Positions 16,001 through 61,202 of a stretch of DNA of 64,000 bases are shown here, piece after piece. The stretch lies in the IMG/VR virus record IMGVR_UViG_3300042922_000643, positions 62,001-126,000 of that record; one strand, written 5' to 3'. The notes under the pieces are model-generated. The model had not been told where the DNA came from, did no database searches, and saw only the letters and a list, made by a program, of their open reading frames with translations. Numbering within the stretch: the first letter of the stretch is position 1; every line of letters begins with the position of its first letter. The position numbers and the translations under genes were made by a program.

Positions 16001-16014
16001 CTTTCATTCACCCC

Positions 16015-23850: not shown

Positions 23851-23880
23851 ATGCTAACCATATTGAGTGAATAAAGTCAA
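23851..23880 (-). promoter_or_regulatory. Candidate late promoter
   Basis: TTGACT-N18-TAGCAT with GGT immediately before the -10. Confidence 0.55.
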
Positions 23881-24231
23881 TCAGTGTACCGTAAGAATTT
23901 CAAAGATAATGTGTTCTTCTCGTTCCATGTCGCCATTAGCAAGTGGACGCTCTTCAAGAAGGTAGAACTTGAAGTTCGCATCGAAGGATCGGATCAAGTA
24001 TTCTTCCCCACCGATCTCTTCATATATCTTGATTGCACACTTGCGTATACTAGATACTTTCCTAGCATTATCGACATCATAGGTCAGCAAGTTCAATGGT
24101 TTGATAATCGTAAGTGTGATTGCTCCCGAGGATTCTACTCGGTAGCTGCTGCTTTTAAAAGGACTCTCGTAGTAGTAAGTTACTGCTGGCTGCTTTGATG
24201 TATCGATAATTTCAATTCGCATTGTACTCAT
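23881..24231 (-). CDS. Hypothetical protein (possible fibre-associated chaperone)
   Basis: GAGGAGAGG RBS; follows a tail fibre gene; function inferred from position only. Confidence 0.65.
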   Translation of the reverse strand: MSTMRIEIIDTSKQPAVTYYYESPFKSSSYRVESSGAITLTIIKPLNLLTYDVDNARKVSSIRKCAIKIYEEIGGEEYLIRSFDANFKFYLLEERPLANGDMEREEHIIFEILTVH

Positions 24232-24262
24232 TACCGATCCTCTCCTCGTTAATTAATGTATG

Positions 24263-25297
24263 CTATGTAGCGTACATATCGTTTCCTACAGGAATGACTA
24301 GCTTTCTACTGATGCGCACACTCTTGTCTCCATACACACCAAGAAGTGGAAGGTATGCTTGAGAGCTATCTCCCCAGTAAGTTGATGCTTCAAAGATCGT
24401 ACTTGCATTACCTCCCCACCTAGTAGCGACAATCATTCCATGATGTCCTGCACCATCATTATTATTCTCTATATAAGCAGCTGTAGTACCTGTACTGACA
24501 CCACCAGGTCTTGGCATAGCATTAGTACCTAATAAAGATGTAAGTCTTCCAATAGGACCAGAAGTTCCCGCCGACATACTTCCATCCGTAGCAATTGTGC
24601 CATACCCCGCATAGATACTCTTACCGTTATAGGTACGCATCCACGTGCTATCTGTCATTTGCCATCCACCACCGTGAGTTTGATGGTAAAAAACTTCAGA
24701 TCCATTTACTCGAAACGATCCTGTGATAAGATTTAGTCCAGAAGTATCTAGGGTAAAATATGTCGCCGTACCATTATGACTTTCAAATGTCATTGCAGGA
24801 GCACCAACATATAGACGGTTTGATCCTGCCAAGAGGTGCATATTACCATTGGCATCGGAAGGACGAAGCCAGCTTGTTCCTGAAGCATTTTGAATCCCAA
24901 CGTTCTTGTTGTTAGGCATTACAATAGTTCCTGCGTCCATACTAATATTGCCTTCTTTAGTGACAGCTAGCACACTTCCACCAAGTCCATTACCGACGAC
25001 AAATGTTGGAACTGTAGTTGCGCCTGGGTTTCCGCTATTCCAGTTGATATAGACACCATGGCCTGTTCCTGCATCTAAGTGAAGGTTACCATTACTAGTA
25101 AAGACATTCGCTGTTGTGGTATTAGCTATTGGAGAGTCACCCCCAACTATGAGGGTGCCTCCATAAGCAGTATTTGGTCCAAACTTCATTCGCTTACTGG
25201 CAGTAAAATTGATGTTACCCATCATGTAAATCTCGGGCATCCCTGTATGCATAATAGGATACCCTGCAATTGTAGATCCGCCTTCTAGTAAAGCCAT
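24263..25297 (-). CDS. Tail fibre protein
   Basis: Gly/Asn/Thr-rich; NGNLHLDA motif; HGGGWQMTDSTWMRTYNGKSIY (PilV/fibre-type motif); ends in LVIPVG. Confidence 0.8.
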   Translation of the reverse strand: MALLEGGSTIAGYPIMHTGMPEIYMMGNINFTASKRMKFGPNTAYGGTLIVGGDSPIANTTTANVFTSNGNLHLDAGTGHGVYINWNSGNPGATTVPTFVVGNGLGGSVLAVTKEGNISMDAGTIVMPNNKNVGIQNASGTSWLRPSDANGNMHLLAGSNRLYVGAPAMTFESHNGTATYFTLDTSGLNLITGSFRVNGSEVFYHQTHGGGWQMTDSTWMRTYNGKSIYAGYGTIATDGSMSAGTSGPIGRLTSLLGTNAMPRPGGVSTGTTAAYIENNNDGAGHHGMIVATRWGGNASTIFEASTYWGDSSQAYLPLLGVYGDKSVRISRKLVIPVGNDMYAT

Positions 25298-25298
25298 A

Positions 25299-28200
25299 CT
25301 ACAGCACCTGCCCTTCTATAATATTCCCTAGTACTTTCGTTTGTCCACTCTTATCGAATCTCATTTTCGTGTCCCACATTGCATTTAGATCTGCGGTAGA
25401 GATTAGTCTCGGAGCAATAAACAAATTCTTGCAATAGGAATCCCAGCAATCTTCATCCCACGAGTATCCACCTACTCTTACGATACCATTAAGACCAGCC
25501 ATTGTTTGCCCAGTGCAATTGGAAGTATAAATTGCTCCACTGGCTCCATAGATTTCCGCGGTCATCACATCTGTTGTGGAGTTATACTTTAAGACATACA
25601 AAGCCCAATCCTTATAATCTTGTTCAGATAGTGCAGAGCCACTACCATATTTGCTGACATAAGTCGTAGCAGTATTGCTATATCCTACAAGTTGCCAGCT
25701 AGCTACAGTTGCAGTAGCTCCCCACTTAAACCCAATACAAGCATCTGACTGACCAAGTACGTAGTAGTCTCCGACTGCAATCGGAACAAATCGGTTTCCT
25801 GTCGTCGTTGTCATACTCCAAATATTAGGCTTCGCGATTACCCCTACGGTCCAATCATTATTTGCATTTATGATGGAAGGAACTGTGTACTTTAAGATAC
25901 TATCTCCAACAGTTGTGTTTGGTGGAATCGATGGATTCTGATAAGGGAGATTTGTGGAGTTCGTCCATTGTACCCCATTAATATAGAGTTCACCAGCATT
26001 TGCAGAGTACCCCCATGAGGGTCCATCCACAAGCAGAGCTCCAGTATAAGCTTCTGATGCCTTGGATGTTCTCCAGAAGTAATGCCATTGCCCGTCAGCA
26101 ATGATAGAAGCATCTCCAGCAATCGTAGTAAAGATTGCGCGTGTCCAGTCAGAGGTGTAGAGACCAGCCGCAGTAAAAGCAGTGACTCCAGCAGCAGCAG
26201 ATGTCTTATACCATCCTGATACAGTTACATAGCTATCTGCTGTTACGGTGAAGAGTGTTCCATATGGTCCTTCCCATCCATGCCACTGGCTTGCCGAACC
26301 TGTCTTGGTGAATTTCCACGTCTTGGAATTTGGAATAGGCCCTGGCTCTGTTAGAGTGACATCAGTAATAATGCCACCATTATTCGTCCAAGGAGCTACA
26401 TCATAAAATAGATTCTTAAAAGAAGCTCCAATGAATACTCCGTTCTGATCATAGATAGTATTTGTTTCAGTGGTTGGCGGATTCAGATGGTTAATATCTA
26501 GAGAATCTACAGTAAGTGGATAGAACAAATCTCCACCTTGTAAACCCATAGGGCCTTCTACAATCCCTTTTGTGATAAGATCTCCGCTAGCCTTCAGTGA
26601 GCTCTTTGGTTTTGCAAGTGCAGAAATCTCTTCCGTATTTAGATTCCTATTGTAAACCGCTAGATTACTAATGGGTCTGTTGGCAGGAGAGCTATTTGTA
26701 CTTGTATCGTAGAACTTCATTCCGCCTACACGGGTTGTTGGCGTTGTTGCGCCCTCGCGGTTGATGAGGAATAAGAGTCTTACGTATCTTGTGCCATATC
26801 GGAACAAGCTTCCTGATCCACCGCCTACACCTGTTATAGTTCCCGTGTACTGCGTCCAGCTCGTTGGCACGGTTACGTTACCTGCGGCGATGTAGTTATA
26901 TCCGCCGCCGTCAGTAGAACAAGCCACCGCTGTTCCAACAGGAAGTGTTGTTCCCGTCCAAGCACTTGCGAGTGTGATCGTTTTTGCTGTGGTATTCAGG
27001 GTAACATAACCTACTGTTCCATCTGAGTATGTATAGTTCTGGTAGTTTCCTGTGATCCACCAAGAGAATTGCTTCGAGTAATGATAGACTCCAGCGGTTC
27101 CTGCCGCCCATCCCGTTGTGCTTGTTAGATACACTACGGTATCTCCTGGCTTCAATGCTTGAGCTAATGTGGTAAGACCCGCGTGAGTGACTCGGTTGTG
27201 CGGAATAACCGCTTTGTTCTTATCAAAGCAGATTACTCCATAGTAGAGTTTACTGGTTGCGGCCATTCCTTTGAACCATCCCGTTAGAGTATAGGGTCTA
27301 GTTGGGTCTACGGGAATATACTCATCAGAATATACCGTAGAGTCTGCACTTGTTCTAGATAAGCAACCTGCTTGCCCATCTGGACTATCTCCAGCTACAT
27401 ATACAAAGGAACTGAAGTTGGTATTATCACCTAAGTTAGCTGATCCATTCTTAATCAGGTTATTATTTACGCCATTTCCTACTCGCATATATTCAATGTT
27501 TGTGGCGTCAATCACAGGAACAGCGACCCCACCATAGCTTCCAGGCATCATAACCCCATCTATCCATAGCTCAAGACGAGTGGGCATAGAGATGACTACG
27601 AAGTGATGAACGCCATCGGTCTGAACAGGAGCAGACACTTCTTTGTAATTCGTAAGACCAGTACCTGAGCGTAGACGGAATGTGCCATCACCCAGCTGGT
27701 GAAGAGATAGAACATTCAAATCCATTGATCCATTATCGAATGAAAAGAGGGCCTGCTCAGATCCTGTAACCGTACGAGAATCTACTTCATAGTCAAGGGA
27801 TATACTAATCGGAGCCGTTGGTTTAAATGGTATCGAAGTGACACTTGCGGTAGGATATGATCGACTACCTATCACATAGGAAGTAGAGAATTGTCTCGGT
27901 TCCATTTGCGGTGCGCACAACCACATCCGCTTGCCTGACGGAATACTAATTACAAAGTCTAGTGAGTCCGTGTCATTGTTAACCTCTGTTCTTACGAAGT
28001 TAAAGACGCATCTCTTCCATCCTTCTTCAGGGTCAACTTGGATTTGGTTTGTCCACTTACCATGGTTCTCTCCAGCAGCAGCAGTAAGTCCTTGGATCTG
28101 TCCAGGAGCTTCTGTCTTCACATAAACTGAGATTGTGTAATCTGTTACGTCAGCCTGAGGAGAGTAATCACCGTAAGAGTAATACCATCCGCTACCACCA

Positions 28201-31466: not shown

Positions 31467-31499
31467 CTCTTCTCACCTCTCATCTATCTATGCAATATA

Positions 31500-31528
31500 G
31501 TTGTAACCAAAGGAAGTCACTTCGTCAA
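31500..31528 (-). promoter_or_regulatory. Candidate late promoter
   Basis: TTGACG-N17-TACAAC (GGTTACAAC) right after a terminator. Confidence 0.6.
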
Positions 31529-31554
31529 TAAGAAAAACCCTGCGGTAGCAGGGT
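31529..31554 (-). terminator. Rho-independent terminator
   Basis: ACCCTGC-TACC-GCAGGGT followed by TTTTCTT. Confidence 0.8.
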
Positions 31555-31560
31555 ATATTC

Positions 31561-34695: not shown

Positions 34696-34710
34696 CTCTT
34701 ATCACCCTTT

Positions 34711-36447: not shown

Positions 36448-36449
36448 TA

Positions 36450-38309: not shown

Positions 38310-38357
38310 GATATCACCCGCTTACATAGGAATAGGAGGGATTTTGTCCCTCCTTTA

Positions 38358-38386
38358 GTCGTAACCTATATGATCTTTCTGTGCAA
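38358..38386 (-). promoter_or_regulatory. Candidate late promoter followed by a leader hairpin
   Basis: TTGCAC-N17-TACGAC (GGTTACGAC); downstream AGGAGGGA/TCCCTCCT hairpin. Confidence 0.55.
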
Positions 38387-38388
38387 GA

Positions 38389-40872: not shown

Positions 40873-40887
40873 TATTTATTCCCCTCC

Positions 40888-49815: not shown

Positions 49816-49828
49816 GTATTCTCACCCC

Positions 49829-50017: not shown

Positions 50018-50034
50018 TATTTATCTCCCCTTTC

Positions 50035-50064
50035 AAAAAAAGACTACCCACTTAGAGGTAGTCT
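50035..50064 (-). terminator. Rho-independent terminator overlapping a candidate promoter
   Basis: AGACTACC/GGTAGTCT stem followed by a T-run. Confidence 0.85.
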
Positions 50065-50093
50065 AGTCAAGCGATTATTCAATAATGAGGCCT

Positions 50094-53000
50094 TTATGAG
50101 AATTTCTCCACAGTAATGCGAATATTATGAGTTGCTGGGATCGTAATATCCGCGGCGGTACTGTTTCCAATACGAAGCTTTATCTTACCTGCTTCTGTGA
50201 TATAAGGATTCCACATCAACCCCTCAGGCAGATTATACATTACTACCCGAACATCATCATTCAGTGCTGCATTTGCCATGGTCAAATCAATAGTTGTTGT
50301 GGAGTGGGCTGGAATACTTAAGGTGGGAATCGCAGTCGTCAGGTTATAACTCGCTAATAGAGTAGAGAATACACCTGTTGATACTGTTCCGCCACCGATC
50401 TTTACAGAATCTGCTGCAAAAGAGCCAGTAATAATTCCTGTCCATGTCGTGCCCCAATCTATCGACTGCTCTTGTTTGCCGCTCGTTTCCCGATAGATTG
50501 TTCCGCCCACTAGATATTTTGATACCCAGGAGTCTCTCCAGTGTGCATGGCCAAGTGAGGATTTAGACTGCACAAGCATAGGGGCACTTGTCCATGCTAC
50601 GTTATTAAATTTGACATTTGATTCGTACATCGTTGCTCTTTCGTGGATCTCCATCAAACTACCATTTCCTGCGATATCGATAGCTTTTGCTGATTTCCAT
50701 ACGCCTTTGATCCCATTGTTCTCAAAGATAACACGAGATTGTTGTGCGCCCGTCCCCTTCCAAATTGCCAGAGGTGCAGCGGTAAGTCCAGCACCAGAAG
50801 TATCGGTCATTAAGAAGCTGGAGTTTCGTACAGTCATCGAAACCTGACCAAAGGATCTGAATGCGTGCATATGACGGATACCCTCAAAATCGATACCATC
50901 AAAGATGATATTGCTTGATGTGCCTGTCGCGGAAGTGATTAGATCTTTACCTATAATAACTGCGCCAGAATCATCATCATCTGCGGATCGGAATTGTCCA
51001 CCAGAGATTTGTCCACCGAAGAAGTGCCACCCACCGCCATCAGGAGAGATCTGAATACCAGCCGTATTTCCTGTTAGCCAGAAGTTGTAGAAATTCATAT
51101 CACTACCACTAGATACTCCCGCTCTAAGATTCAAACCAATAGCACCAAGCTGGGCCCTACAGTTGTAATAAACAGTACCGTAGCAGTTATCAATCATGTC
51201 GAAAGCGATAGGTATTCTTTTAACTGTTACACTGTGGACTTCAAACTGACGCATACCTCTTAGAAGTAAGCCCCTATTGGTACCCGTAGCATTACTTGTC
51301 GGTCCTTCGATAAAAATGTCTTTGATGTACCCTGAAGGAGCTACTCCTGATCCACCACCAGAAGTTCCATTCTGGATCGTAAGAACATCATAAGCAGTTG
51401 AACTTGTAGGAAGAATGCGTGTGGAAGTTCCTCCAGCTCCATAGATCATAATGTTCTCATCTGTAGCAGTACCTGTATATTTGGAAGTATCTGCAACAAG
51501 GCCTGCTGAAATCTTATAGTTACCCGCAGGGATGTAAAGAGGAATACGTAACTCTGCCATTTTGTTCAGTGCAGCTTGCAGGGTTACCGTATCGTCAGTC
51601 GTGTTGTCTCCCTTTACATTGAAATCTAAAACGGCATTAATGTATCCTCTATCAGTATAGGTCATAATAGCGGCACCGCCGCCTGCTGCAATGAAATCAG
51701 CAACTTGAGTAACTGTAATCGATTTAGTCGTAGGTAATAGCTGACTCCAGCCTCTACTGGTTTGCCCTATAATCCCGTCGTAATCACCCATCATAGACAG
51801 GTAATAAGTTGAGCCTAGAATGTCACCTTCAAGCTTGTAGTAGTTGGTACACCCATCATAGCTCGGATTTGTAATCATAAACGTACTATTCCCAGCAGAT
51901 AGATCAACAGCTACTGTATAGTTGAAGAATTTAGGTAGACTCAGCTCAAACCCAACTACACGATTCAGTTTAATCGCCATAGGTTGTTTCGTACTTTCCC
52001 AATGTTTAAAGCTACAGTTTCTGAACGAAATACCTGTAGGTGCTGTTCCTTCAAGGTCACCAATCTCTAGCGGTATTCCGCCATTGCCTTCGATATTGAC
52101 TGTATCAAAAGTAACTGTGCGTGTCTGTCCGCCAACGATCTTGACACCTCCAAGTGCATTACGTTCAATTGCACCGCCTACAAAGTTAAATACGTCAGGT
52201 GTATTTAAGTAAATGCCAAGGCCAGCGTTATCCTTGATGATACAGTTGTAGTGATTCGAAGGAGTTGCGGATACCACAAAGTAAGGTAATTCCCAGCCGT
52301 TGAAATTATACTCAACTTTGACATTCTCAAAGTGTGTGTACCAACTACAACGTTCACTGACTCCAAGATAGTGATTACGGATATCAACATTAACTATAGC
52401 TACTGTATGACAGAGGAATAGCTCCAGCGCAATCCTAGTGAAAGGTAGTGCCGTTAGCGATCCCGCATATGCAGAAGTCAGAGTTAAGTTGTTTAATCCC
52501 CAAGTATCAATGTATTCATTGCGAACGTCGGTATATGTATTCCCTTCACCGATAGCTTTAATTGAAGGCCACACAGACTCGTAAGAGACAAGCTTTGTGC
52601 CTGAACGATCTACGCCTCCTAGAGTAACACCATCTTTGAGCCAGATTCTGCCGAAACGATACGTTCCTTCATGGAGCGGGATTCTGCCGCCGCCTTGCTC
52701 AAAAGCATAGTCGATAGCGGCTTGAAGACCTACTGTTTCGTCATGACGAACTACAGCGGTGGAAACAGTAATAGTAGCAGCATCCTCTAGAGTAACGACC
52801 TTCGTTGTAGTATCGATTGCGATGATCTTGGATACAAGTTCTCCAACGCCACTTTTCATTGTCTTAATATCAAGTACGACCCCTGTTAGACCTGGGTCAT
52901 AAGTAAGAGCTGTCTGCGCTCCTGGAGTACTACACTCATATGCCATTACAGTATCGGAAGCGGAATACTTAGTCCAGCCTGTGAGATTAGCTCCTCCATT

Positions 53001-53978
53001 AAGAGTGTTTTTAATAGAAGTAATGCTGCCAGTACCTTCTTGAAACTCTGTGAAGTTTGCATAAAGAGTACCGAACCCAAATACTTGGTGGCCATACTTT
53101 CTAGACCCAGAAGTGTTTGACGTAAAACGAACAACATTTGCTGAGGGATTACTGATTGTCCATCCTGTCCAAAGGTTTGTAAAATAGGAATCTGTCTTCA
53201 ATCGATTAGCAAAAGCTGATGCCGTTTCTCCATTATAGACAGTAATGTACTTGGTATTCCACTCTAAAGAAATACCAAATTGCCCCTCACGATCACTCGT
53301 ACCTACGAATGTAAGGTCCATAATCTGAGGCCTTGCAGTAATTGTGTAACTAGCTGTCGTTGCACCAGAACTAATGGTCAATGTTCCAGACGCTGTTGGG
53401 GGCGATTTGATTTCAATAAAGGACATAAACTTTTCTTTTGCTGCCCCCGCAACAGCAAGGTATTGGTCAACCTCAAAGCTGTCTATAGACGCAAGCGTTA
53501 AGTCTTTGGAACCATCCGTAATGCTCCCAGCCGTTGTTCTTACTGAACCGCTGATCTTATAATCGTCAAGATTAATAAGGTTTTTCCTCTTTACAAACTT
53601 TTGTTCAGAGGTATCAATCCTCGTGTTCATACTCTCTATGTCAGTAAGGATGTCTTGCAGTTCCGTATTGGCCGTTGTAAGACTAACGCTAAGATCATCT
53701 AGGTTAGTGTTGAGCTCTATAACGTCTGCCTCTGTAGAACTTGTTCTTGATCTCAGCTCTGTGTCATCATAGACTGTAAGATTGTAGCCATCAACAGAGA
53801 GTTTCCCATTGATGACTGACGATCCCACAACTGAACCTTTGTTGTCATACAAATACATGTCATTGTCGATAAGCTGCTTCATCGTCTCATTGAAAACATC
53901 CGCGTGGACCTTATCCGTGGTCTCGAATTTACGTAGAAGCTCATTATAAACACGCGAGTTGGTTTCATGGTTAGCCAT
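50094..53978 (-). CDS. Tailspike with two pectate-lyase-like beta-helix (depolymerase) domains
   Basis: N-terminal anchor RKFETTDKVHADVFN..KQLIDND; DETVGLQAAID...GTYR and DFNVKGDNTTDDTVTLQAALN...LYIPAGNYKIS. Confidence 0.85.
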   Translation of the reverse strand: MANHETNSRVYNELLRKFETTDKVHADVFNETMKQLIDNDMYLYDNKGSVVGSSVINGKLSVDGYNLTVYDDTELRSRTSSTEADVIELNTNLDDLSVSLTTANTELQDILTDIESMNTRIDTSEQKFVKRKNLINLDDYKISGSVRTTAGSITDGSKDLTLASIDSFEVDQYLAVAGAAKEKFMSFIEIKSPPTASGTLTISSGATTASYTITARPQIMDLTFVGTSDREGQFGISLEWNTKYITVYNGETASAFANRLKTDSYFTNLWTGWTISNPSANVVRFTSNTSGSRKYGHQVFGFGTLYANFTEFQEGTGSITSIKNTLNGGANLTGWTKYSASDTVMAYECSTPGAQTALTYDPGLTGVVLDIKTMKSGVGELVSKIIAIDTTTKVVTLEDAATITVSTAVVRHDETVGLQAAIDYAFEQGGGRIPLHEGTYRFGRIWLKDGVTLGGVDRSGTKLVSYESVWPSIKAIGEGNTYTDVRNEYIDTWGLNNLTLTSAYAGSLTALPFTRIALELFLCHTVAIVNVDIRNHYLGVSERCSWYTHFENVKVEYNFNGWELPYFVVSATPSNHYNCIIKDNAGLGIYLNTPDVFNFVGGAIERNALGGVKIVGGQTRTVTFDTVNIEGNGGIPLEIGDLEGTAPTGISFRNCSFKHWESTKQPMAIKLNRVVGFELSLPKFFNYTVAVDLSAGNSTFMITNPSYDGCTNYYKLEGDILGSTYYLSMMGDYDGIIGQTSRGWSQLLPTTKSITVTQVADFIAAGGGAAIMTYTDRGYINAVLDFNVKGDNTTDDTVTLQAALNKMAELRIPLYIPAGNYKISAGLVADTSKYTGTATDENIMIYGAGGTSTRILPTSSTAYDVLTIQNGTSGGGSGVAPSGYIKDIFIEGPTSNATGTNRGLLLRGMRQFEVHSVTVKRIPIAFDMIDNCYGTVYYNCRAQLGAIGLNLRAGVSSGSDMNFYNFWLTGNTAGIQISPDGGGWHFFGGQISGGQFRSADDDDSGAVIIGKDLITSATGTSSNIIFDGIDFEGIRHMHAFRSFGQVSMTVRNSSFLMTDTSGAGLTAAPLAIWKGTGAQQSRVIFENNGIKGVWKSAKAIDIAGNGSLMEIHERATMYESNVKFNNVAWTSAPMLVQSKSSLGHAHWRDSWVSKYLVGGTIYRETSGKQEQSIDWGTTWTGIITGSFAADSVKIGGGTVSTGVFSTLLASYNLTTAIPTLSIPAHSTTTIDLTMANAALNDDVRVVMYNLPEGLMWNPYITEAGKIKLRIGNSTAADITIPATHNIRITVEKFS

Positions 53979-53983
53979 TCATT

Positions 53984-56900
53984 CTACCCTCCCATATTTA
54001 TAGTCCCATCTAATGTGTTTTCGCCGTCCATGAGGGTGCTCTCAACTGGATCTGTTGTGGTGACAGGATCTACATACTCAATAATATAGTAAACACCGTA
54101 TGCTACATATTTCTTAAGTATATCTATAACCTGTTGCTCATCGAACTGTCCACCATTTATCTTCAAAATTGAATTAGGCAAATTTAAAATAATTACACCA
54201 TTACTGTAATAAGCTTGGCCATCCCATGGCCCCATATCCCAATGGTTCACCACAAGTGGATTCTTTTTCTTCAGCACATCTTTAGATAGACTCTCTTTTA
54301 CGCCGCCGCCGCGGACACGGGCATCCAGAACAGTAGCCTGATTTACATTGGTATGTTCTCGAAGCTGTGCTACACCGATCAAGAGTGCAATACCTGGCAT
54401 AGACTTACGGATCTGATCCCACTCTGCTTTGGAATAGCAATGACGAATAGTGTATGGGTTTGTATCCCCGAAGCTATTGGACTGCGGTACAATATAGATA
54501 TATACCTCCTTATTCATCAGTTTTGAAGTTGGGACTTCTTCATAGCTGAGGATAGGAACACCTGTGAGCTCTCCATTACGAATTACAGGGAGCGTACAGT
54601 AATGACCTTCAGATGGATTGAGGTCTAGATACATATACTTCTCTAGATTTTCATCGTAGTAGCCATTGTACTCTACAAAGTTTTCTTCATAAGAATAAGA
54701 GCAATAGATCTCGTCCTTGAAACTAATGGGAGTATTCAGGTAGAGAAGCCCGCTTTGTGTGTCATAATCTTTAATCGTAACAATCTTATCTACAGAGTAA
54801 AGATAATCGATATACACACTTTCGTTCACGTCTTCCAGAAATTCAACTGTGCCTTCATCATAATTAATTTGGTAGGTGTTGATATCTGCGATGTGATCCT
54901 GATCATTCGTACTTCCTTCAGGGATACGATAAATGACAGGGCTAGGGTAGAGTAGCCAGTTCTCATGGGTAGATACGAAAGTCTTCTTATCTGTAGTTTT
55001 AAGCATCTCTCTCTTTACTCGACCATTACTGTATGTTCGTTTTCTGAGGTCAATATTGTTGTAGGTATAATCAACCATGATCCGTCCTGGCGCTGTTTCC
55101 TCCAGAATGATACGACCACCTTCATAGTCGATATCATACTCACCTACATAATTAATGAAGACACCGTTACCGTTAGTATCCGAGAGAACAACAGGAGGAA
55201 CTGTTTTTACCCAGTTACCAGATAAAGCTTTGAAGATTTTAGCTGTTTCCCCGTCCATCTTTGTCAGTATCTCTCCAGAAGAGGTTCCTTGCTGGATATA
55301 TAAAGGAGAATTCTGGACACGAACTGTAGTGTCGTCAACGTATTCACAGATTTCCTTGTATATGCGGCGGAACGGTTGTCCTGGTTTAAAGATCTGACGA
55401 TCATATTCAGGTAGAGAGTATCGGTGAGTGCCAAATTGTTTTGTTGCGTATGCTGTAGAAAACTCATCATATTCGGCATAGCTAAGACTGTCCTTCGTAA
55501 AACTTCCGTTATGGACACGAGGCAACCACGGATCTCTCTCATCGACTGTCGCAGGGTAGGTCAGGTAAATACGTTCATCACCCTGAGGCTTTGTAGCGTA
55601 TCTGCGTTTGGTAGCTCGGATCGTGTAGTAGTCAGCCCATGCTTGAACAACGACCTCAAGGCGTGCAGTTCCAGCCATCAGCTCAGAATATCCAATCAGG
55701 TTCTCTCCCGATGTACTATAGAAGTAAACGCCAGTCTTCTTATTAAAGAATGCGACATTAACGAATGCATTTTCGCCGCGATCATCTACAGGGTCAACTG
55801 TAACTTCAAAGAAGATTCGGTCTTGATTTGCCCATTCCGCCCCAGCTTTCAAGTCAGGCAGTAGGGTTGTTAAAAGGTCAATAGTCACGATACCGTCAGA
55901 TCTTCGAATATCCATCTTCTTACGACTATAGTTTCCATACTCACGAATATATCTCGCTAACGTATTATCCCATTTATAAACAAATGACTTAATAATACAA
56001 TAGAAGGAAACAGTAGGGTCATAGGTTGTTACATCTGCCGAAGAGAATCCTTCTGTTTTAAGGTCAAAGGTGTCTCCTTTAGGCTTAACTGCGTATGCAT
56101 ATAGAGCAGAACTTCCATCATTATCTGGAGTCATGTACACACTTCCAATGTTATACATTTCCACATAATCCATATAGACCGTACCTTGTCCCGATGTTAA
56201 GAGGCCGATTCGAATTTCGATATCTGTAACTTCGGTCAAACCGAAATTAACCTCGACTTTTGTCCAGTCGCGATCTCCAATAATCAGATTTCCTGTAGCT
56301 AAAATTTCACCATTAGCTTTACGGATCTGGATTGTTGCGCCAGAAGAACTAACGTTTGATGTTTTGATCCAAGCGCTAGAACGATAAGAACCAAGAGGAA
56401 GTTGAGGGACACTGGAACTCCAGTATGCAGCACCTTCGGTAACTGTTGTAATCTTTAGAGCTTTTTCCCCGCGCTCTGAAATATTCGAGATATGTTCGAA
56501 AGTTGCTGTACCTAGCCCCAAATTTGTGCTCCACCCTGAGATCGCATTTAGGTTGGTATTTGTCCAAGATGTTACTGCGGTAGCTGTTGTGCTATCATAA
56601 CTACCAATCTCAAAGTCATTATTTGTCACAACGACCTGGCTGTCAGCTTGAACCTCGGTTTTAAATATGCCCTTTGCTTTGTAATACGAAGACGGCATAT
56701 AGGGGATAAGGGCATCTCTGATACTTTTATTCAGAATCTTTTTGGCTACGATTTGCGTACTATCCATATCGCTACGGTCATCAATATACACAGAGCGATC
56801 TCCATCGTTGTATTCCTGCTTAAACAGGTTATCTCTATGATAAACATACTCGCGCATCCATGGAGTTGTAACGTAATTCTCTTCAGCAATCCCCAGGATC

Positions 56901-58564
56901 ATATTGATCGTCATCTTGATATCATCGTTATCCTTATTCATTAAGGCGCGAAGGATACCGCAGTTTGAGATTACGATAATACCCTCATCGTAAATAGACC
57001 GAGTAATTACCGCAGGGTCATTATTCTGATACTTCACAATCGTAGTCCAAAGACTTAAGCTTTCACCGTCACCAAACACAATCTTTGGATTCACACCTTC
57101 ATATCCTACTTGAATCTTGGTTTTAGTGAGAAGATACAGACGTTCAACTGCTGAGCGCTCAATAGAATACGGGCTATGATTGTCTAAATCTACGGTGTTA
57201 ATTCCATACGATTTTGGACCTGTAGAAGATTCTGTAGTGGAGAATGATACACTAGTCAGAAAGCGACCAAGATCTAGTCGGTTTGCACCAGCGCCAGCAT
57301 TATCGATCCATAGACGACCACCATTTTGAAGATAAGTACGAATCGTATCACTATAAAGAGAGACGTCAGCAACTCCATATCCTGTAATAATAATAAGATC
57401 GTAATCATTCAAATAATCTGAAGGCATAGACAGATCCGTGATCCAATACTGAATACTTTTATCTTCTTTCGAAGTACCTACTGGTGGATGTGGATTAACG
57501 AATTCCAAGTATCCAGGTTTGGAGCTGTGCTCATAAATCTTCTTGAGTGCTCCCGTTAAATCCTCAGCATTGAACACACTATCATTTAGATAGACTAATC
57601 CAACATTCAAGTATCCCGTGTGTGTAGTATCCAGCTTCGTACGTAAACGACCTTTGATACGGTAGGAAAATTGATGTGCGGGTCTGGTTGTATTATCTGC
57701 AATAATGACCTGGCTTGGTGAATATACTTGGAATTTTTGATCGTCTGTTTCAACAATCGAATATGTCTTCTCGCTTAAAGAAGAAGACCATTCTCCATTT
57801 ATTTTTCGATTCTCTAGAATGTCTTCCATATCTTCCTTCGGAATTTCTGTGAAAAATGGATAGGCATTCAAGACTTCTACAGAGTCACTAATGTGAGATC
57901 CATTTGTATTGTACTTCTCATAACGAATCAAGTAGCTCTCTTCAGACGATCCCTGGAAGTTAGTATATATAAAAATACGATATGCATTCGCTGGGATACC
58001 AACGCCCGATTGTTTAATCAATTGGATCTTATAACGAAGAGAGCTGTCTATAGCTGTGCCATCAAGTTTTGTTACTCGAATTTTGTTTCCAAGATACAGA
58101 AGATTGTCTCTATTAGTAGCCTGAGAATAATCCATAATGTCCGTGATTGGTTTCTCAGTGTACCCACCAGTGTAGTATGCCACAGCAGCTCCTGTCGCAT
58201 CGAATAAGCCCTTTATCTCCGCTCTGTAGTATAGTGGAACTGGAGAATCTTGAGCGCTCTTAGGGGCTGAGAATTCGTCTGTGAGGGTGATGTTCTTTGT
58301 TGGTGCATAGTATGGCTTATTAAGCTCGCGCAACAGAAACGTATCATCTGGGAATACCAGCGTATCTCCCACATTTGAACTCAATGTGTTCTCTACGATT
58401 TGTCCTGACATATCTGTAATCAGCAGGTTTTTAGACGGGCTAATTTCAGGAGTGTGGACATAAGCTAGATTTACGCTATTAGAAGGGACTTTATTCCCTA
58501 CACGAATCGTATAGCCAAGGTCTTCTCCGCCCTGATCAATACGATCCTCATGATTCTTTGTCAT
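53984..58564 (-). CDS. Large virion structural protein with GATase-like/DUF4159-like and CBM-like domains
   Basis: YDLIIITGYG...IRTYLQNGGRLWIDN; NNDFE...VYMDYVEM CBM-like; repeated IDYE.G.I/V baseplate-type motifs; DARVRGGG. Confidence 0.75.
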   Translation of the reverse strand: MTKNHEDRIDQGGEDLGYTIRVGNKVPSNSVNLAYVHTPEISPSKNLLITDMSGQIVENTLSSNVGDTLVFPDDTFLLRELNKPYYAPTKNITLTDEFSAPKSAQDSPVPLYYRAEIKGLFDATGAAVAYYTGGYTEKPITDIMDYSQATNRDNLLYLGNKIRVTKLDGTAIDSSLRYKIQLIKQSGVGIPANAYRIFIYTNFQGSSEESYLIRYEKYNTNGSHISDSVEVLNAYPFFTEIPKEDMEDILENRKINGEWSSSLSEKTYSIVETDDQKFQVYSPSQVIIADNTTRPAHQFSYRIKGRLRTKLDTTHTGYLNVGLVYLNDSVFNAEDLTGALKKIYEHSSKPGYLEFVNPHPPVGTSKEDKSIQYWITDLSMPSDYLNDYDLIIITGYGVADVSLYSDTIRTYLQNGGRLWIDNAGAGANRLDLGRFLTSVSFSTTESSTGPKSYGINTVDLDNHSPYSIERSAVERLYLLTKTKIQVGYEGVNPKIVFGDGESLSLWTTIVKYQNNDPAVITRSIYDEGIIVISNCGILRALMNKDNDDIKMTINMILGIAEENYVTTPWMREYVYHRDNLFKQEYNDGDRSVYIDDRSDMDSTQIVAKKILNKSIRDALIPYMPSSYYKAKGIFKTEVQADSQVVVTNNDFEIGSYDSTTATAVTSWTNTNLNAISGWSTNLGLGTATFEHISNISERGEKALKITTVTEGAAYWSSSVPQLPLGSYRSSAWIKTSNVSSSGATIQIRKANGEILATGNLIIGDRDWTKVEVNFGLTEVTDIEIRIGLLTSGQGTVYMDYVEMYNIGSVYMTPDNDGSSALYAYAVKPKGDTFDLKTEGFSSADVTTYDPTVSFYCIIKSFVYKWDNTLARYIREYGNYSRKKMDIRRSDGIVTIDLLTTLLPDLKAGAEWANQDRIFFEVTVDPVDDRGENAFVNVAFFNKKTGVYFYSTSGENLIGYSELMAGTARLEVVVQAWADYYTIRATKRRYATKPQGDERIYLTYPATVDERDPWLPRVHNGSFTKDSLSYAEYDEFSTAYATKQFGTHRYSLPEYDRQIFKPGQPFRRIYKEICEYVDDTTVRVQNSPLYIQQGTSSGEILTKMDGETAKIFKALSGNWVKTVPPVVLSDTNGNGVFINYVGEYDIDYEGGRIILEETAPGRIMVDYTYNNIDLRKRTYSNGRVKREMLKTTDKKTFVSTHENWLLYPSPVIYRIPEGSTNDQDHIADINTYQINYDEGTVEFLEDVNESVYIDYLYSVDKIVTIKDYDTQSGLLYLNTPISFKDEIYCSYSYEENFVEYNGYYDENLEKYMYLDLNPSEGHYCTLPVIRNGELTGVPILSYEEVPTSKLMNKEVYIYIVPQSNSFGDTNPYTIRHCYSKAEWDQIRKSMPGIALLIGVAQLREHTNVNQATVLDARVRGGGVKESLSKDVLKKKNPLVVNHWDMGPWDGQAYYSNGVIILNLPNSILKINGGQFDEQQVIDILKKYVAYGVYYIIEYVDPVTTTDPVESTLMDGENTLDGTINMGG

Positions 58565-58579
58565 CTTTGACCCACCTCT

Positions 58580-61138
58580 TTAGCCATTTAGTCTATACCA
58601 GTTCTGTATTGCTAGATACTTATTATAAAGGCTTGTCGTCAGCTTGTTGTTATTTAGCCATACAATTTCTTGTATATTTATTAATCCATCCTCATTAAGG
58701 TCGAGCAAGGCTCCAAGCCCATTAGAAAGATCAGCAGCTTTTGTGTTGATATGATCCGTAACTTTACCCAGGATGTAAACTAGGATTTCTTCCCATTCAG
58801 ATTCTTTTAATGTCTGCTGTCGATCCTCGATCCGCTCAATATTACCATAGAATAACGTCATCGGGATTTGAACACCAAGACCACTGACCTGATCGATCAC
58901 GTTGATATACTCTGGCAGCTCGGAGCTTGCGAATTTATCTTCACTGAGTAGTGGAGCACGATAGCGATATAAATGCCTTCCTGCTTCTTCTCGAACACGA
59001 ATACTTCCTGCATCCGTCTTTGGAAGAACTTGCCCATACTTAGCTACTACACTAAGCTTTACATTACTTGCGAAGTTTCCATTCTGATCTAGTGGTTCAA
59101 TACTGATTGCCGACTCTGAAACTCCATCTGCAAACAAGAAGTTTGGAGAGGCTTTCACTCGAAAGACGGAGGTGTTCCCTGGTGTCTTCGTGATGTAAAG
59201 GAAACCTTGATGATTTGGGTTAAGCAATGGATTCAGTTCTATCATCGTAGCCAGCTTCTCTTCAGAATAGCGATTCCCTTCATAGGTAACTTCTACAGGT
59301 TTACCATCATGCTTACCTACAGTGACACGGAAAGAATCAGGCTGCTCAATATTGAAATCTACTGTATAAGCATCTTCTGGCTGATAAGATACGAAGAGAG
59401 GTTTACCTCTAAGTTCTTTCTTTTGCTCCGCAGTTAATGTCAGTAGAATTTTATTATTATCCACTGTATAGGGGTCTCCAACAATTGCACCTGATTGGTC
59501 CTTCACCTGGATTTTGAAGTTTTCATTTTCGATATCAGGATAACCAACTCGGATGTAGTCAGAAGTCCCGTCATAAGGAACGTACTCCTCATTGTATGTT
59601 CGGTATTCTCCAGAGATAGGGTCGAAGAAAGAGACTTTACGCATTGGCGTGCCATCTTCTTTCTGTACAATCACAGGTGACCCATAAGCAGGAGAAGGTG
59701 TAATCTCGATAATTGATTTATTAAAGCTCCCAATAGCATGATCAAACGTAGCCCGAAGAATCATCTGATCTATATTCAGAATCGGATTTTCAGAAGAATA
59801 TATTTTTAGAATATCGACTTCTGTTATTACCTTCGAGAAAATGATCAAGTCATCAATTGCCCCTGTGAATACAGAATTATGGAGACTACTGTGACCAATG
59901 CGAATAACATCAGAAGCTCCTAAGAATGTCTGGACAGCTGTATTGGCTTGGCGCACGCTATTCACCGTAAGGGACATACCATGCTCACTCCAAGTGATTG
60001 CGACGTGATTCCATTCGTTTAGGGTGAGTGATCCTGCGGCAGTTAGAGTAACTCCTTGATATTTAAAAGCGATGCCTAATGCTTGCTGACTAACCGAGAG
60101 CTCTCCGTTTGTGTCTCCATATTCTAAGATCGCAGAGGTACCTTCAGTTAGTGGATACATCCACAGACTAGCTGATCCCTCTTTACTGTTAATATTCTCT
60201 TTCGAGGGGTATGTCAGAAAGGAGGCTTCTCTCGATGCGCTATTCACAAGATCTTCGTTATGTATATACCCTGTGCTATCTTCACCCTTTTCAAGTTGCA
60301 CATTATTCACCTGGATCTCGTCTGTCGCAGAGAACCGAAGTTTGATTTGAGTACAGCCCGTAGAGGTTGTAAAAGTGTAGCTTCGACTCACCCATTCCTC
60401 ACTTGCTGAAAGAACAGAGCTATGTGTAGCTTGGGTTCCATCTACTTCAATCAGTTCAGCCTTTCCGCCACCTGATAAGGAGAAGGATAATGTATAGGGT
60501 TGTAGAGGAAGAACAGTAATAAGCTGCTCTAAATACACACTATCTGTTCCATCACTCTTGATGTGAAGATAGGCATCGTCGTTATCTAGCTTTTGAATAT
60601 CGACAAGAGCTCCAGACACACTATCGACGTTCGAAGTCCACCCCTCTGGGAATTCGGACTTGATCTCGATGGAATCGCACTTTGTCCCAGCTTCCCCATA
60701 CGCAGCGACCTTGCCGCTTTGAAGACCGTTATATTCAATATTGAAGATCAGGCTACCATCCAAATAAACTTTATAGTTTGTTCTTTTGACTTGACAGACT
60801 AATTGGTAAGTTTGTCCAACTACTAAGTCAGGGAGATTACTATTCTCTGCAAGATCAAGTTTGTTTGTTGATATCTGCGCACTTAAACGAGCAATCGTTT
60901 TAGACCCCGAGAAAGAGAGTCCAGAAAGATCAGCGCTTGTATATGAGCCTATGATACAGGAGAGGTATGTAATCTCTGAATTGAAACGTGGGATAATACC
61001 GAATTCTCCACCCTGATAAATCATGTCAGCTGTGAGAGTTAAATCTTTCCATTTACTATCACCAACAGCATAGTAGCCGTCAGTGTCCCATATTAATTTT
61101 CCATTGTCATTATGCGTATCCGCTAGAGTATACAGCAT
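58580..61138 (-). CDS. Virion structural protein with CBM-like, LamG, Ig(Big_1)-like and EF-hand/dockerin-like motifs
   Basis: NNVQLEKG, EWNHVAITW...IDDLIIF, LFADGVSESAISI, DLNEDGLINIQE; start may be 61138, 61159 or 61165. Confidence 0.8.
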   Translation of the reverse strand: MLYTLADTHNDNGKLIWDTDGYYAVGDSKWKDLTLTADMIYQGGEFGIIPRFNSEITYLSCIIGSYTSADLSGLSFSGSKTIARLSAQISTNKLDLAENSNLPDLVVGQTYQLVCQVKRTNYKVYLDGSLIFNIEYNGLQSGKVAAYGEAGTKCDSIEIKSEFPEGWTSNVDSVSGALVDIQKLDNDDAYLHIKSDGTDSVYLEQLITVLPLQPYTLSFSLSGGGKAELIEVDGTQATHSSVLSASEEWVSRSYTFTTSTGCTQIKLRFSATDEIQVNNVQLEKGEDSTGYIHNEDLVNSASREASFLTYPSKENINSKEGSASLWMYPLTEGTSAILEYGDTNGELSVSQQALGIAFKYQGVTLTAAGSLTLNEWNHVAITWSEHGMSLTVNSVRQANTAVQTFLGASDVIRIGHSSLHNSVFTGAIDDLIIFSKVITEVDILKIYSSENPILNIDQMILRATFDHAIGSFNKSIIEITPSPAYGSPVIVQKEDGTPMRKVSFFDPISGEYRTYNEEYVPYDGTSDYIRVGYPDIENENFKIQVKDQSGAIVGDPYTVDNNKILLTLTAEQKKELRGKPLFVSYQPEDAYTVDFNIEQPDSFRVTVGKHDGKPVEVTYEGNRYSEEKLATMIELNPLLNPNHQGFLYITKTPGNTSVFRVKASPNFLFADGVSESAISIEPLDQNGNFASNVKLSVVAKYGQVLPKTDAGSIRVREEAGRHLYRYRAPLLSEDKFASSELPEYINVIDQVSGLGVQIPMTLFYGNIERIEDRQQTLKESEWEEILVYILGKVTDHINTKAADLSNGLGALLDLNEDGLINIQEIVWLNNNKLTTSLYNKYLAIQNWYRLNG

Positions 61139-61172
61139 AAACACCTTCTTTCCAGACATTCTCACTACTAAA

Positions 61173-61201
61173 CTTGTAACCTATACCTCTGAATAAATCA
61201 A
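61173..61201 (-). promoter_or_regulatory. Candidate late promoter
   Basis: TTGATT-N17-TACAAG (GGTTACAAG) right after a terminator. Confidence 0.6.
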
Positions 61202-61202
61202 T

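What the first reader, a model, noticed from the sequence alone, without database searches (positions are those of the whole stretch)
23851..61201. Recurring non-canonical promoter motif TTG-N17/18-GGTTA(C/G) ahead of structural transcription units
Seen on the minus strand in four intergenic gaps: TTGATT-N17-TACAAG (61173-61201), TTGCAC-N17-TACGAC (38358-38386), TTGACG-N17-TACAAC (31500-31528) and TTGACT-N18-TAGCAT (23851-23880). All have GGT directly before the -10, and three lack the near-invariant final T of sigma-A -10 boxes. Promoters at 10207, 10419 and 3658 are canonical instead. Inference: a late promoter class read by a phage sigma factor or activator-modified RNA polymerase.
Basis: partly seen in the sequence, partly recalled or inferred. 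Interest (0 to 1): 0.6.

Follow-up and report, generated by a model that had tools for sequence, protein, structure and literature searches.

The report
Conserved GGTTA-box promoter class, jumbo phage
A short two-part DNA signal (TTG, 17 bases, then GGTTA) recurs ahead of the tail and virion gene blocks of a 251-kb soil Bacillus-type jumbo phage and at the same places in at least eight related phages, so it is very probably a phage-specific promoter class, though no transcript data exist to prove it or to show which sigma factor reads it.

Summary
The motif is not chance. TTGAC-N15/16-GGTTA occurs 5, 6 and 6 times in this genome and in Bacillus phages KLEB27-3 and Edson, against 0.6-0.9 expected. 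Sixteen of 17 hits lie on the structural-arm strand. Ten of 17 are intergenic, against 6.5% of the DNA (P 2e-8).

The window is part of a 251,543-bp IMG/VR phage of the 0305phi8-36 lineage. Window site 1 has orthologues in eight genomes; only TATTG ... A..GGTTA.A is invariant there, with a fixed 14-nt spacer of free sequence. Site 4 and three sites outside the window are also orthologously conserved.

The conserved unit is TTGAC(W)-N10-A-R-T-GGTTA-(C/G), not a TAnnnN hexamer. It pairs a sigma-A-like -35 with a GG-led -10 at sigB-like spacing (GTTTAA-N14-GGGTAT).

The genome encodes two sigma-70-family proteins outside the window and no YonO-like RNA polymerase. Motif-bearing genomes carry both sigma types; motif-free relatives carry only one.

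Best reading: a promoter class of the structural arm, read by host core polymerase with a phage sigma. There are no RNA data, so start sites, timing and the reading factor stay untested. It also heads a RuvC-sigma operon, so it is not purely structural.

The parts
61173..61201 (-). It heads the unit of an ~852-aa Laminin_G_3 virion protein, a 1526-aa protein and a 1294-aa beta-helix protein.
   Evidence: Read. PWM score 21.0. Orthologous sites in 8 genomes, where only TATTG...A..GGTTA.A is invariant.
61202..61228 (-). Intrinsic terminator just upstream of site 1 (8-bp stem 61209-61228). Its U-run (61202-61208) runs directly into the -35 element.
   Evidence: Folds at -13.6 kcal/mol, z -4.6. 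The stem ends 32 nt before the A of GGTTA, as at sites 3 and g178896 and at KLEB27-3 61274; the KLEB27-3 63285 stem ends at -27.
61136..61138 (-). Probable true start codon (ATG) of the gene after site 1. It is preceded by GAAGGTG. This leaves a leader of about 28 nt from the predicted start site.
   Evidence: N-termini of orthologues P0006-P0012 align with MLYTLADTH.
50044..50070 (-). Probable fifth, variant site: TTGACT-N15-GGGTAG. It is embedded in a terminator hairpin (50041-50064) followed by U7. It stands ahead of a conserved 62-aa gene and the 2975-aa gene.
   Evidence: PWM score 17.3. Hairpin -12.3 kcal/mol. A nearly identical element lies at the same place in relative L055:17092-17157.
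38358..38386 (-). Site 2: TTGCAC-N14-GGTTAC. It heads the 619-, 578- and 1044-aa genes (variable tail-fibre-like genes).
   Evidence: Read. PWM score 14.1, the weakest of the four.
38334..38354 (-). Hairpin (8-bp stem) that begins about at the predicted start site of site 2. It is followed by a weak U-run.
   Evidence: Folds at -13.8 kcal/mol, z -2.75. The same arrangement occurs at KLEB27-3 61274 and 77364 and at Edson 51176 and 60004.
31500..31528 (-). Site 3: TTGACG-N14-GGTTAC. It heads the 2055-aa Ig/Laminin_G tail-fibre-like gene.
   Evidence: Read. PWM score 21.3. Pfam hits of the gene.
31529..31554 (-). Intrinsic terminator just upstream of site 3 (stem 31537-31554). Its U-run abuts the -35 element.
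   Evidence: -13.3 kcal/mol, z -4.9.
23851..23880 (-). Site 4: TTGACT-N15-GGTTAG. It heads the 86-, 126- and 450-aa genes and a run of virion structural genes that continues to the holin/amidase lysis genes.
   Evidence: Read. PWM score 21.8. Orthologous sites are KLEB27-3 77364 and Edson 60004. Gene functions.

Best explanation
The four sites (plus a variant fifth in the window and at least three more elsewhere in the genome) are promoters of one phage-lineage-specific class. The consensus is a-TTGAC(T/A)-N10-A-R-T-GGTTA-(C/G).

They start or re-start transcription of the long minus-strand arm. That arm carries the terminase-to-tail-fibre structural genes, the lysis genes and a RuvC-sigma operon.

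The proposed mechanism is inferred, not shown. Host core RNA polymerase carries a phage-encoded sigma-70-family factor. Its C-terminal domain reads a sigma-A-like TTG(AC) -35 element. Its region 2/3 reads a GG-led -10 element (GGTTA) 14 nt downstream. This is the geometry of sigB/sigF-type promoters.

There are two candidate genes, both outside the window:
- sigma(a): genome 218282-218950, plus strand, in the early-looking arm.
- sigma(b): genome 52434-53285, minus strand, next to RuvC and itself behind a motif copy.

The sites are tied to intrinsic terminators in two stereotyped ways. Either the terminator stem ends about 32 nt before the A of GGTTA (27 nt in one case), or a hairpin begins about at the predicted start site. 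Each unit would therefore be insulated from read-through and restarted by the phage factor.
For: Shown:
- Sites and coordinates.
- Enrichment, strand bias and intergenic bias in three genomes.
- Unbiased k-mer recovery of the motif.
- The 20-site alignment, with invariant TT, GG and T and near-invariant G, A, T and A, and a spacing of 14-15.
- Orthologous conservation. Site 1 is kept in 8 genomes with only the two boxes invariant. Site 4, g178896, the RuvC-sigma operon site and a site inside the portal gene are kept in 3-5 genomes.
- Canonical sigma-A-type promoters sit in the other arms and at the replication-gene end, not in the structural block.
- The terminator arrangements.
- Sigma-70-family genes are present. 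Sigma(b) is syntenic with RuvC across the lineage.
- No YonO/RdRP-like polymerase is found here, in KLEB27-3 or in Edson.
- Phyletic pattern: the motif-bearing genomes (this one, KLEB27-3, Edson, G001) have sigma(b) plus a second sigma above the TIGR02937 cut-off. The motif-free relatives (0305phi8-36, MTATph1, G003) have sigma(b) only.

From the literature:
- SigB promoters are GTTTAA-N14-GGGTAT (PMC9847131).
- Group-5 sigma promoters are TTTACA / GTTATA (PMC4031146).
Against: - There are no transcript data of any kind. Only three DNA soil metagenome runs hold the sequence.
- The -35 element is the host sigma-A consensus. With TA placed at -12/-11 the geometry is also sigma-A-like. In Edson every site also has T at -7 (read from the alignment). 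Host sigma-A, alone or helped by a phage factor, is therefore not excluded.
- The sigma(a)-class proteins of the motif-bearing phages are only about 20% identical to each other. That sits badly with a shared specificity.
- Sigma(b) is also present in relatives without the motif.
- The phyletic pattern may reflect a single clade split, so it is weak evidence.
- Sigma(b) scores below the curated sigma cut-off (34 against 42.9 bits), and its AlphaFold model was too poor to use (pLDDT 52).
- Some hairpins just after the motif could terminate transcripts that start there.
Confidence: 0.55

Rival explanations
1. The sites are promoters read by the host housekeeping sigma-A holoenzyme. They are made deliberately weak by a poor -10 (TAnnnN) and switched on late by a phage co-activator or a polymerase modification. 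The conserved GGT would be the activator's contact or an unusual extended -10.
For: The -35 element is TTGAC(A/T) in 15 of 20 sites. The spacing to TA is 17-18, the sigma-A optimum. T at -7 is present in 13 of 20 sites and in all six Edson sites (read from the same alignment). The first-pass sigma-70 scan already picks up site 4 at 9 of 12.
Against: Three of the four window sites lack T-7, which established knowledge of sigma-A promoters treats as near-essential. The invariant GG sits one base off the TG of an extended -10. Hexamer positions 3-6 are unconstrained, while GGT is invariant. No activator-like dyad or repeat accompanies the motif. The phages that carry the motif also carry extra sigma genes.
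Confidence: 0.25
2. The sites are read by a host alternative sigma of the SigB/F/G group, for example the general stress factor induced by infection.
For: The geometry, hexamer-N14-GG(G/T)TA, matches GTTTAA-N14-GGGTAT (PMC9847131). The variant site in the window has GGGTAG. The RuvC-sigma operon site reads GTTTAC-N15-GGGTTA here and GTTTAC in L050.
Against: The GTTT of the -35, which that paper treats as conserved in SigB-dependent promoters, is absent from all four window sites and from most others. The third base of the -10 is T, not G, in 19 of 20 sites.
Confidence: 0.05
3. The motif is not a promoter. It is some other DNA or RNA signal at operon boundaries, for example a binding site for an antiterminator or terminator-modulating protein, a processing site, or part of the terminators themselves.
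For: About half of the sites touch an intrinsic terminator on one side or the other. In two cases (window 50044-50070 and KLEB27-3 95246) the box lies inside the hairpin.
Against: Many sites have no hairpin at all. The hairpin can be on either side. The two-box structure with fixed spacing, a -35 identical to the sigma-A consensus, and a location 25-180 nt before start codons all fit a promoter. Copies inside genes (the portal gene) carry no hairpin.
Confidence: 0.07
4. The sites are chance resemblance among a few AT-rich intergenic gaps.
For: There are only four sites in the window. Site 2 has a weak -35 and a PWM score (14.1) within reach of random sequence, where 3-10 hits at 13 or more occur per random genome.
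Against: See the statistics, the k-mer test and the eight-genome footprint.
Confidence: 0.01

Closest known systems
SigB/SigF-type (group 3) promoters of Firmicutes, GTTTAA-N14-GGGTAT (PMC9847131)
   Same: Both are two hexamer-sized boxes separated by 14 nt. In both the downstream box begins with GG and contains TA. The variant site in the window even reads GGGTAG. One phage sigma, sigma(a), has weak SigB/F/G and SigK/E model hits.
   Different: The -35 is TTGAC(W), the sigma-A consensus, not GTTT. The third base of the -10 is T. The motif is carried by a phage and confined to one arm of its genome.
Promoters of the clostridial group-5 sigma factors TcdR/BotR/TetR/UviA: -35 TTTACA, -10 GTTATA or GTTAAT (PMC4031146)
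   Same: The -35 is near the sigma-A consensus; the RuvC-sigma operon sites read TTTACA. The -10 reads GTTA(C/G/A)A, within one base of GTTATA. The factors are small, divergent sigma-70 relatives.
   Different: The SRQ signature of region 4.2 named in that paper is absent from this genome's sigma(b) (YRQ) and sigma(a) (TRS). No family model links them. The G before GTTA is invariant here.
Phage sigma cascades of large Bacillus phages (SPO1 gp28 and gp33/34) and the T4 gp55 late promoters (from my own knowledge)
   Same: The logic is the same. Host sigma-A promoters serve early genes, and phage-encoded sigma-family proteins redirect host core polymerase to a phage-only consensus ahead of middle or late genes.
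   Different: The consensus sequences are unrelated (as I recall them: SPO1 middle AGGAGA/TTTNTTT, SPO1 late CGTTAGA/GATATT, T4 late TATAAATA with no -35). Here the host -35 is retained.
Candidate 21-bp phage-specific promoter class of Bacillus phage 0305phi8-36 (Hardies et al. 2007, PMC2147016)
   Same: It comes from the same phage lineage. It is the same kind of claim: self-similar motifs in promoter-sized gaps, proposed to be read by a phage-directed polymerase.
   Different: That class lies in the non-structural right arm and was tentatively assigned to a YonO/RdRP-like polymerase. The strict GGTTA motif is absent from 0305phi8-36. This phage has no such polymerase. The published logo is a figure and could not be compared.
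Late transcriptional regulators of Gram-positive phages (RinA / ArpU / LtrC superfamily; from my own knowledge)
   Same: They are small sigma-region-4-like phage proteins that switch on the packaging, structural and lysis genes. Sigma(b) has a weak ArpU-family hit (E 0.0016).
   Different: As I recall, those act at a single promoter ahead of the terminase genes. Here a multi-copy bipartite motif is spread through a 130-kb arm.

Membership tests
Bipartite sigma-70-family promoter (any sigma) | Two conserved boxes at a fixed distance | tested here: met
   TTG(AC) and GGTTA are 14-15 nt apart in 20 of 20 curated sites. The spacer is 14 nt in all 8 orthologues of site 1, and its sequence is free.
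Bipartite sigma-70-family promoter (any sigma) | Lies upstream of, and in the same direction as, genes, at operon boundaries | tested here: met
   16 of 17 strict hits are on the arm's coding strand and 10 of 17 are intergenic. Sites lie 25-180 nt before start codons. They adjoin terminators.
Bipartite sigma-70-family promoter (any sigma) | Transcripts start about 7 nt after the -10 box | not testable with these tools
   No RNA run holds the sequence.
Housekeeping sigma-A promoter | -35 TTGACA with a 17 +/- 1 spacer | tested here: met
   The consensus is TTGAC(T/A). The spacing to the TA of GGTTA is 17-18.
Housekeeping sigma-A promoter | -10 TATAAT with A at position 2 and T at position 6 | tested here: not met
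   T at position 6 is absent in 3 of 4 window sites. Hexamer positions 3-6 are unconserved across 20 sites, although T is present in 13 of 20.
Housekeeping sigma-A promoter | If extended: TG one base before the hexamer | tested here: not met
   The invariant bases are GG then T directly before TA. The TG lies one base too far upstream.
SigB-type promoter (GTTTAA-N14-GGGTAT) | GTTT in the -35 box | tested here: not met
   Absent from the four window sites. Present only at the RuvC-sigma operon site of this genome and of L050.
SigB-type promoter (GTTTAA-N14-GGGTAT) | GG-led -10 box 14 nt after the -35 hexamer | tested here: met
   GG is invariant, and the spacer is 14 nt (15 in a minority). The reference consensus is from PMC9847131.
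Group-5 (TcdR-like) sigma promoter | -35 TTTACA and -10 GTTATA | tested here: inconclusive
   TTTACA is found only at the RuvC-sigma operon sites. The -10 reads GTTACA, GTTACG or GTTAGC in the window. The reference consensus is from PMC4031146.
Group-5 (TcdR-like) sigma promoter | The cognate sigma has the SRQ signature in region 4.2 | tested here: not met
   This genome's sigma(b) reads YRQ and its sigma(a) reads TRS. Only the Edson sigma(a)-class protein reads SRQ.
0305phi8-36 21-bp candidate promoter class | Same sequence motif | tested here: inconclusive
   The strict GGTTA motif has 0 hits in 0305phi8-36, and the word is not enriched in its arm gaps. The published logo itself is not held as text.
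Sigma-70 protein family (for the proposed readers) | Regions 2 and 4 detectable by curated models | tested here: met
   Sigma(a): TIGR02937 50 bits against a cut-off of 42.9, and Sigma70_r2 24.9 bits against a cut-off of 24.
Sigma-70 protein family (for the proposed readers) | The same, for sigma(b) | tested here: inconclusive
   TIGR02937 34 bits, below the cut-off, though the match spans regions 2-4. Region-4 matches to FliA, ECF and SigF structures have E about 2e-3. The AlphaFold model was unusable.

The most novel reading that the evidence does not exclude
The GGTTA box is the regulon signature of a previously uncharacterised, highly divergent phage sigma family: sigma(b), always next to RuvC, with only three relatives of 42-53% identity found by the word-indexed search of 5.8 billion proteins. 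This factor amplifies itself from its own GGTTA promoter. The promoters overlap intrinsic terminators so that transcription starts inside the terminator stem. Such a compact unit would stop read-through from upstream yet be invisible to its own transcripts. Further copies are kept inside long structural genes (portal, baseplate J) as internal boosters.
Probability: 0.2. Interest if true: 0.6.

Novelty: new variant of a known kind. Interest (0 to 1): 0.45.

Why it matters
Phages of the 0305phi8-36 lineage are large Bacillus phages (roughly 180-260 kb) whose transcription programme has never been mapped. I found no paper on this motif in the library, and the name KLEB27-3 does not occur in it.

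A conserved phage-only promoter consensus gives three things:
- A first map of the structural-arm transcription units.
- A simple handle for finding late or middle genes in related metagenomic contigs.
- A clean test case for how a small, divergent sigma can keep the host -35 element while changing the -10.

Cultivable relatives exist (KLEB27-3, Edson, WH1), so the prediction can be tested directly. The stereotyped terminator-promoter junctions may also serve as compact insulating parts for Bacillus genetics.

It remains an ordinary kind of thing, since phage-specific promoters read by phage sigmas are textbook. The interest is therefore moderate.

Tried and rejected
- Megablast of 16 kb of the window against GenBank phages found no match. 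Relatives were found only at protein level.
- An IMG/VR search with the 450-aa virion protein found no relatives. The sigma(b) alignment did find some.
- PHROGs and Pfam left several genes behind the sites unnamed.
- AlphaFold2 of sigma(b) with a 4-sequence alignment gave pLDDT 51.6 and pTM 0.30. It is too poor for any fold search, so none was run.
- The search for sequencing runs found only three soil DNA runs and no RNA. Read laying was therefore not used, because DNA contigs cannot show starts.
- The genome search does not hold the records behind the Logan, JGI and NCBI loci L055-L058. Their sigma content could not be checked.
- 7-mer enrichment over all gaps of the genome showed no second phage-specific motif. 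It returned only ribosome-binding sites, terminator tails and TATAAT-like words.
- The only good motif copy in the plus-strand arms (genome 36276) precedes an unnamed 118-aa gene, so it is uninformative.
- A phage RNA polymerase as reader was considered and set aside. PF05183 is absent here, and the large non-structural ORFs are a Pnkp/RNA-ligase fusion and a DNA polymerase III alpha.
- Orthologous motif-like strings inside the sheath gene and another structural gene were considered. They were put down to protein conservation (Ile-Ala ... Gly-Tyr codons), not function.
- The big representative protein search, the complex prediction and the atlas searches were not used. They would not have changed the verdict.

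Full report
**What the window is.** The 64-kb window is bases 62001-126000 of a single 251,543-bp IMG/VR virus record with 42% G+C. The same sequence is held by three soil-metagenome DNA runs. Genes run on the plus strand from 1 to about 51 kb, on the minus strand from about 51 to 180 kb, and on the plus strand again to the end.

The window lies wholly within the minus-strand arm. Read from high to low coordinates, it holds:
- very large virion, tail and tail-fibre-like genes: 918+, 861, 1526, 1294, 2975, 827, 619, 578, 1044 and 2055 aa. They carry Laminin_G, Ig and pectate-lyase-like domains and PHROG 'tail' or 'virion structural' hits;
- a run of virion structural genes;
- an amidase endolysin and a patatin;
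- Rad52, primase, DnaB, a GH26-PA14 protein, a VWA protein and PhoH.

There is no nucleotide match to GenBank phages. At protein level the phage belongs to the lineage of Bacillus phage 0305phi8-36. The closest relatives are vB_BauM_KLEB27-3, then Edson and vB_BceM_WH1. Phage 0305phi8-36 itself and Moorella phage MTATph1 are more distant.

**The observation.** GGT precedes the TA in each, and three of the four lack T at the sixth hexamer position. The canonical promoters quoted for contrast are also real.

**Is it more than chance?**
- The strict pattern TTGAC-N15/16-GGTTA occurs 5 times in this genome, 6 times in KLEB27-3 and 6 times in Edson. The means in second-order Markov genomes are 0.73, 0.87 and 0.63. 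The pattern read backwards gives 1, 0 and 0 (the Edson hits were first seen).
- Sixteen of the 17 hits are on the strand of the structural arm.
- Ten of the 17 are intergenic although only about 6.5% of the DNA is (binomial 1.7e-8).
- A hexamer enrichment test over the arm's gaps, made without reference to the motif, returns GGTTAC (this genome and Edson) and GTGGTT, AGTGGT and TGGTTA (KLEB27-3). These rank directly after the Shine-Dalgarno words. Nothing comparable appears in 0305phi8-36 or MTATph1.

**What is conserved.** I aligned 20 intergenic, co-oriented sites from the three genomes.
- The -35 box is TT(20/20) G(18) A(18) C(15) followed by T or A. An A usually precedes it, and the region upstream is A/T-rich.
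- The downstream box is A(16) R(17) T(15) G(20) G(20) T(19) T(20) A(19), then C or G (15).
- The boxes are 14 nt apart, or 15 in a minority.
- The four bases that would complete a TAnnnN hexamer are not conserved.
- T at the sixth position is present in 13 of 20 sites overall. Reading the alignment by genome gives 6 of 6 in Edson, 5 of 8 in KLEB27-3 and 2 of 6 here. The loss of that T is therefore a trait of this genome, not of the class.

**Phylogenetic footprint.** This is the strongest evidence.

Window site 1 stands before an ~852-aa Laminin_G_3 protein. Its true start is most likely ATG 61138, judged from the N-termini of orthologues. The orthologous gap was recovered from KLEB27-3, Edson, four metagenomic contigs (L055-L058, proteins 41-46% identical) and a 264-kb IMG/VR genome, G001. 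In the eight-way alignment the only invariant columns are TATTG, an A, and GGTTA-n-A. The 14-nt spacer has no conserved sequence, and the flanks are unalignable apart from the terminator tail and the ribosome-binding site.

Other orthologous sets:
- Window site 4 corresponds to KLEB27-3 77364 and Edson 60004.
- The site at the head of the arm (genome 178896) corresponds to Edson 131476 and to a TGGACA-N14-GGTTA site in KLEB27-3.
- A site with TTTACA or TTGAAA as its -35 stands before the RuvC-sigma operon in this genome (54711), KLEB27-3 (101459), Edson (15773), contig L050 and G001.

Sites 2 and 3 precede genes without clear orthologues (variable fibre genes), so they cannot be footprinted.

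**Where the motif is and is not.**
- Canonical TTGACA-N17-TATAAT-type promoters cluster in the two plus-strand arms and at the replication-gene end of the minus arm (window 3658, 5205, 10207, 10419). One more lies at the very head of the arm.
- In the 18-kb stretch that holds sites 2-4, sigma-70-type matches are no more frequent than in shuffles: 35 against 40.7.
- A position-weight scan of the whole genome puts the best-scoring hits on the minus strand of the arm. These include a fifth, variant site in the window: TTGACT-N15-GGGTAG at 50070-50044. That element lies inside a terminator hairpin followed by U7. It recurs almost base for base at the same place in contig L055.
- The motif is not restricted to structural units. 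It heads the RuvC-sigma operon here, and in KLEB27-3 it also precedes the DnaB and PhoH genes.

**Relation to terminators.** A simple stem-plus-T-run search over the 20 sites shows two stereotyped arrangements.
- In four sites (window sites 1 and 3, genome 178896, KLEB27-3 61274) a terminator stem ends 32-33 nt before the A of GGTTA. At KLEB27-3 63285 it ends at -27. The U-tail then runs straight into the -35 box. The window hairpins fold at -13.6 and -13.3 kcal/mol.
- In five sites (window site 2, KLEB27-3 61274 and 77364, Edson 51176 and 60004) a hairpin begins 5-11 nt after that A and ends about 27-28 nt after it. This is at about the predicted start site. Most are followed by a T-run.

If transcription starts where a sigma-70-type geometry predicts, the transcript would lack part or all of the 5' arm of that stem. 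The hairpin would then stop read-through from upstream but not the promoter's own transcripts. This is inference and needs 5'- and 3'-end mapping.

**Who reads it.** The genome encodes three proteins with sigma-70-family signal.
- Sigma(a), 222 aa, genome 218282-218950 on the plus strand. It lies in an arm of small genes. It scores above the curated cut-offs and has weak SigK/E/F/B-type hits.
- Sigma(b), 283 aa, genome 52434-53285 on the minus strand. It scores below the cut-off, but the match spans regions 2-4 and region 4 is clear.
- A third protein is only a weak helix-turn-helix match.

Sigma(b) is conserved and syntenic with RuvC in all five named phages. The word-indexed search of 5.8 billion proteins found only three other relatives, at 42-53% identity. 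It lies behind a motif copy in five genomes.

The sigma(a)-class genes score above the cut-off in this genome, KLEB27-3, Edson and G001, which are exactly the motif-bearing genomes. They are missing from 0305phi8-36, MTATph1 and G003, which lack the motif. However, these proteins are only about 20% identical to each other, and the split may be a single clade event.

A YonO/RdRP-like polymerase, which Hardies et al. proposed as reader of their 21-bp motif (PMC2147016), is present only in 0305phi8-36. A phage sigma working with host core polymerase is therefore the best candidate. I cannot say which sigma. Host sigma-A with or without a helper remains a serious rival, because the -35 box and the spacing to TA are those of sigma-A.

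**Comparison with known systems.**
- The geometry (hexamer, 14 nt, a box that opens with GG and holds TA) is that of SigB-type promoters, GTTTAA-N14-GGGTAT (PMC9847131). The -35 here is the sigma-A consensus, and the third base of the -10 differs.
- The box also lies one base from the GTTATA of the clostridial group-5 sigma promoters, whose -35 is TTTACA (PMC4031146). The SRQ signature of those sigmas is not present in this genome's proteins.
- The overall logic is that of the SPO1 and T4 cascades (my own knowledge), with unrelated consensus sequences.
- I found no description of this motif. KLEB27-3 does not occur in the library, and the recent papers that mention 0305phi8-36 are, by title and abstract, on other topics; none was read.

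**Verdict.** The element is real and lineage-conserved, and it is very probably a promoter class (about 0.85). Its reading by a phage sigma is the best-supported mechanism but is untested (about 0.55). 'Late' timing is plausible from gene content but not shown. It is a new variant of a known kind and of moderate interest. It is directly testable because cultivable relatives exist.

Noticed in passing
Its downstream box forms the 3' arm of a terminator hairpin followed by U7. The whole ~35-nt element is almost identical in a relative whose neighbouring proteins are about 46% identical.
   Followed up: partly
genome 169775-169799 minus strand (window coordinate 107775-107799, outside the window); KLEB27-3 12315; Edson 121640: A perfect motif copy lies inside the portal gene, about 600 nt before its end, in three phages. 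The codons TTG (Leu) and GTT (Val) are fixed, although each is a minority or non-exclusive choice. The joint chance is about 1e-4 if synonymous sites are free. It may be an internal promoter for the protease, scaffold and capsid genes. A similar copy lies in the baseplate-J gene of five genomes.
   Followed up: partly
window 38334-38354; KLEB27-3 61274 and 77364; Edson 51176 and 60004: Hairpins, mostly with a T-run, begin at about the predicted start site of the motif promoters. The start would therefore fall at or within the 5' arm of the stem.
   Followed up: partly
window 1533-1697 (minus strand), upstream of the PIN-PhoH gene; L050:2735-2861: A different two-box element, TTGACT-N17-TTGAAT, is shared by this phage and a relative at the same place. 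In KLEB27-3 the PhoH gene has a GGATA-type box instead.
   Followed up: no
window 50094-53978: The 1294-aa pectate-lyase-like beta-helix gene has no counterpart in KLEB27-3 or Edson. It lies between conserved neighbours and is closed by the terminator/variant-promoter element. It looks like an inserted receptor-binding or depolymerase module.
   Followed up: no
genome 52434-54658, minus strand (outside the window): The gene order RuvC, then a divergent sigma-like protein, is kept in every member of the lineage examined. In 0305phi8-36 that protein (ORF193) is annotated as hypothetical, and the 2007 paper reported that no sigma factor was recognised.
   Followed up: yes
window 3733-5172 and 10472-11338: The phage carries a GH26 mannanase-like domain fused to PA14, and a patatin-like phospholipase next to the lysis genes.
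   Followed up: no
0305phi8-36 (NC_009760) 15993-16101, 21310-21380 and 77212-77289: The string TCAATTCTGA(C/G)A recurs in three left-arm gaps of 0305phi8-36. It may belong to that phage's own promoter class and is unrelated to the GGTTA box.
   Followed up: no
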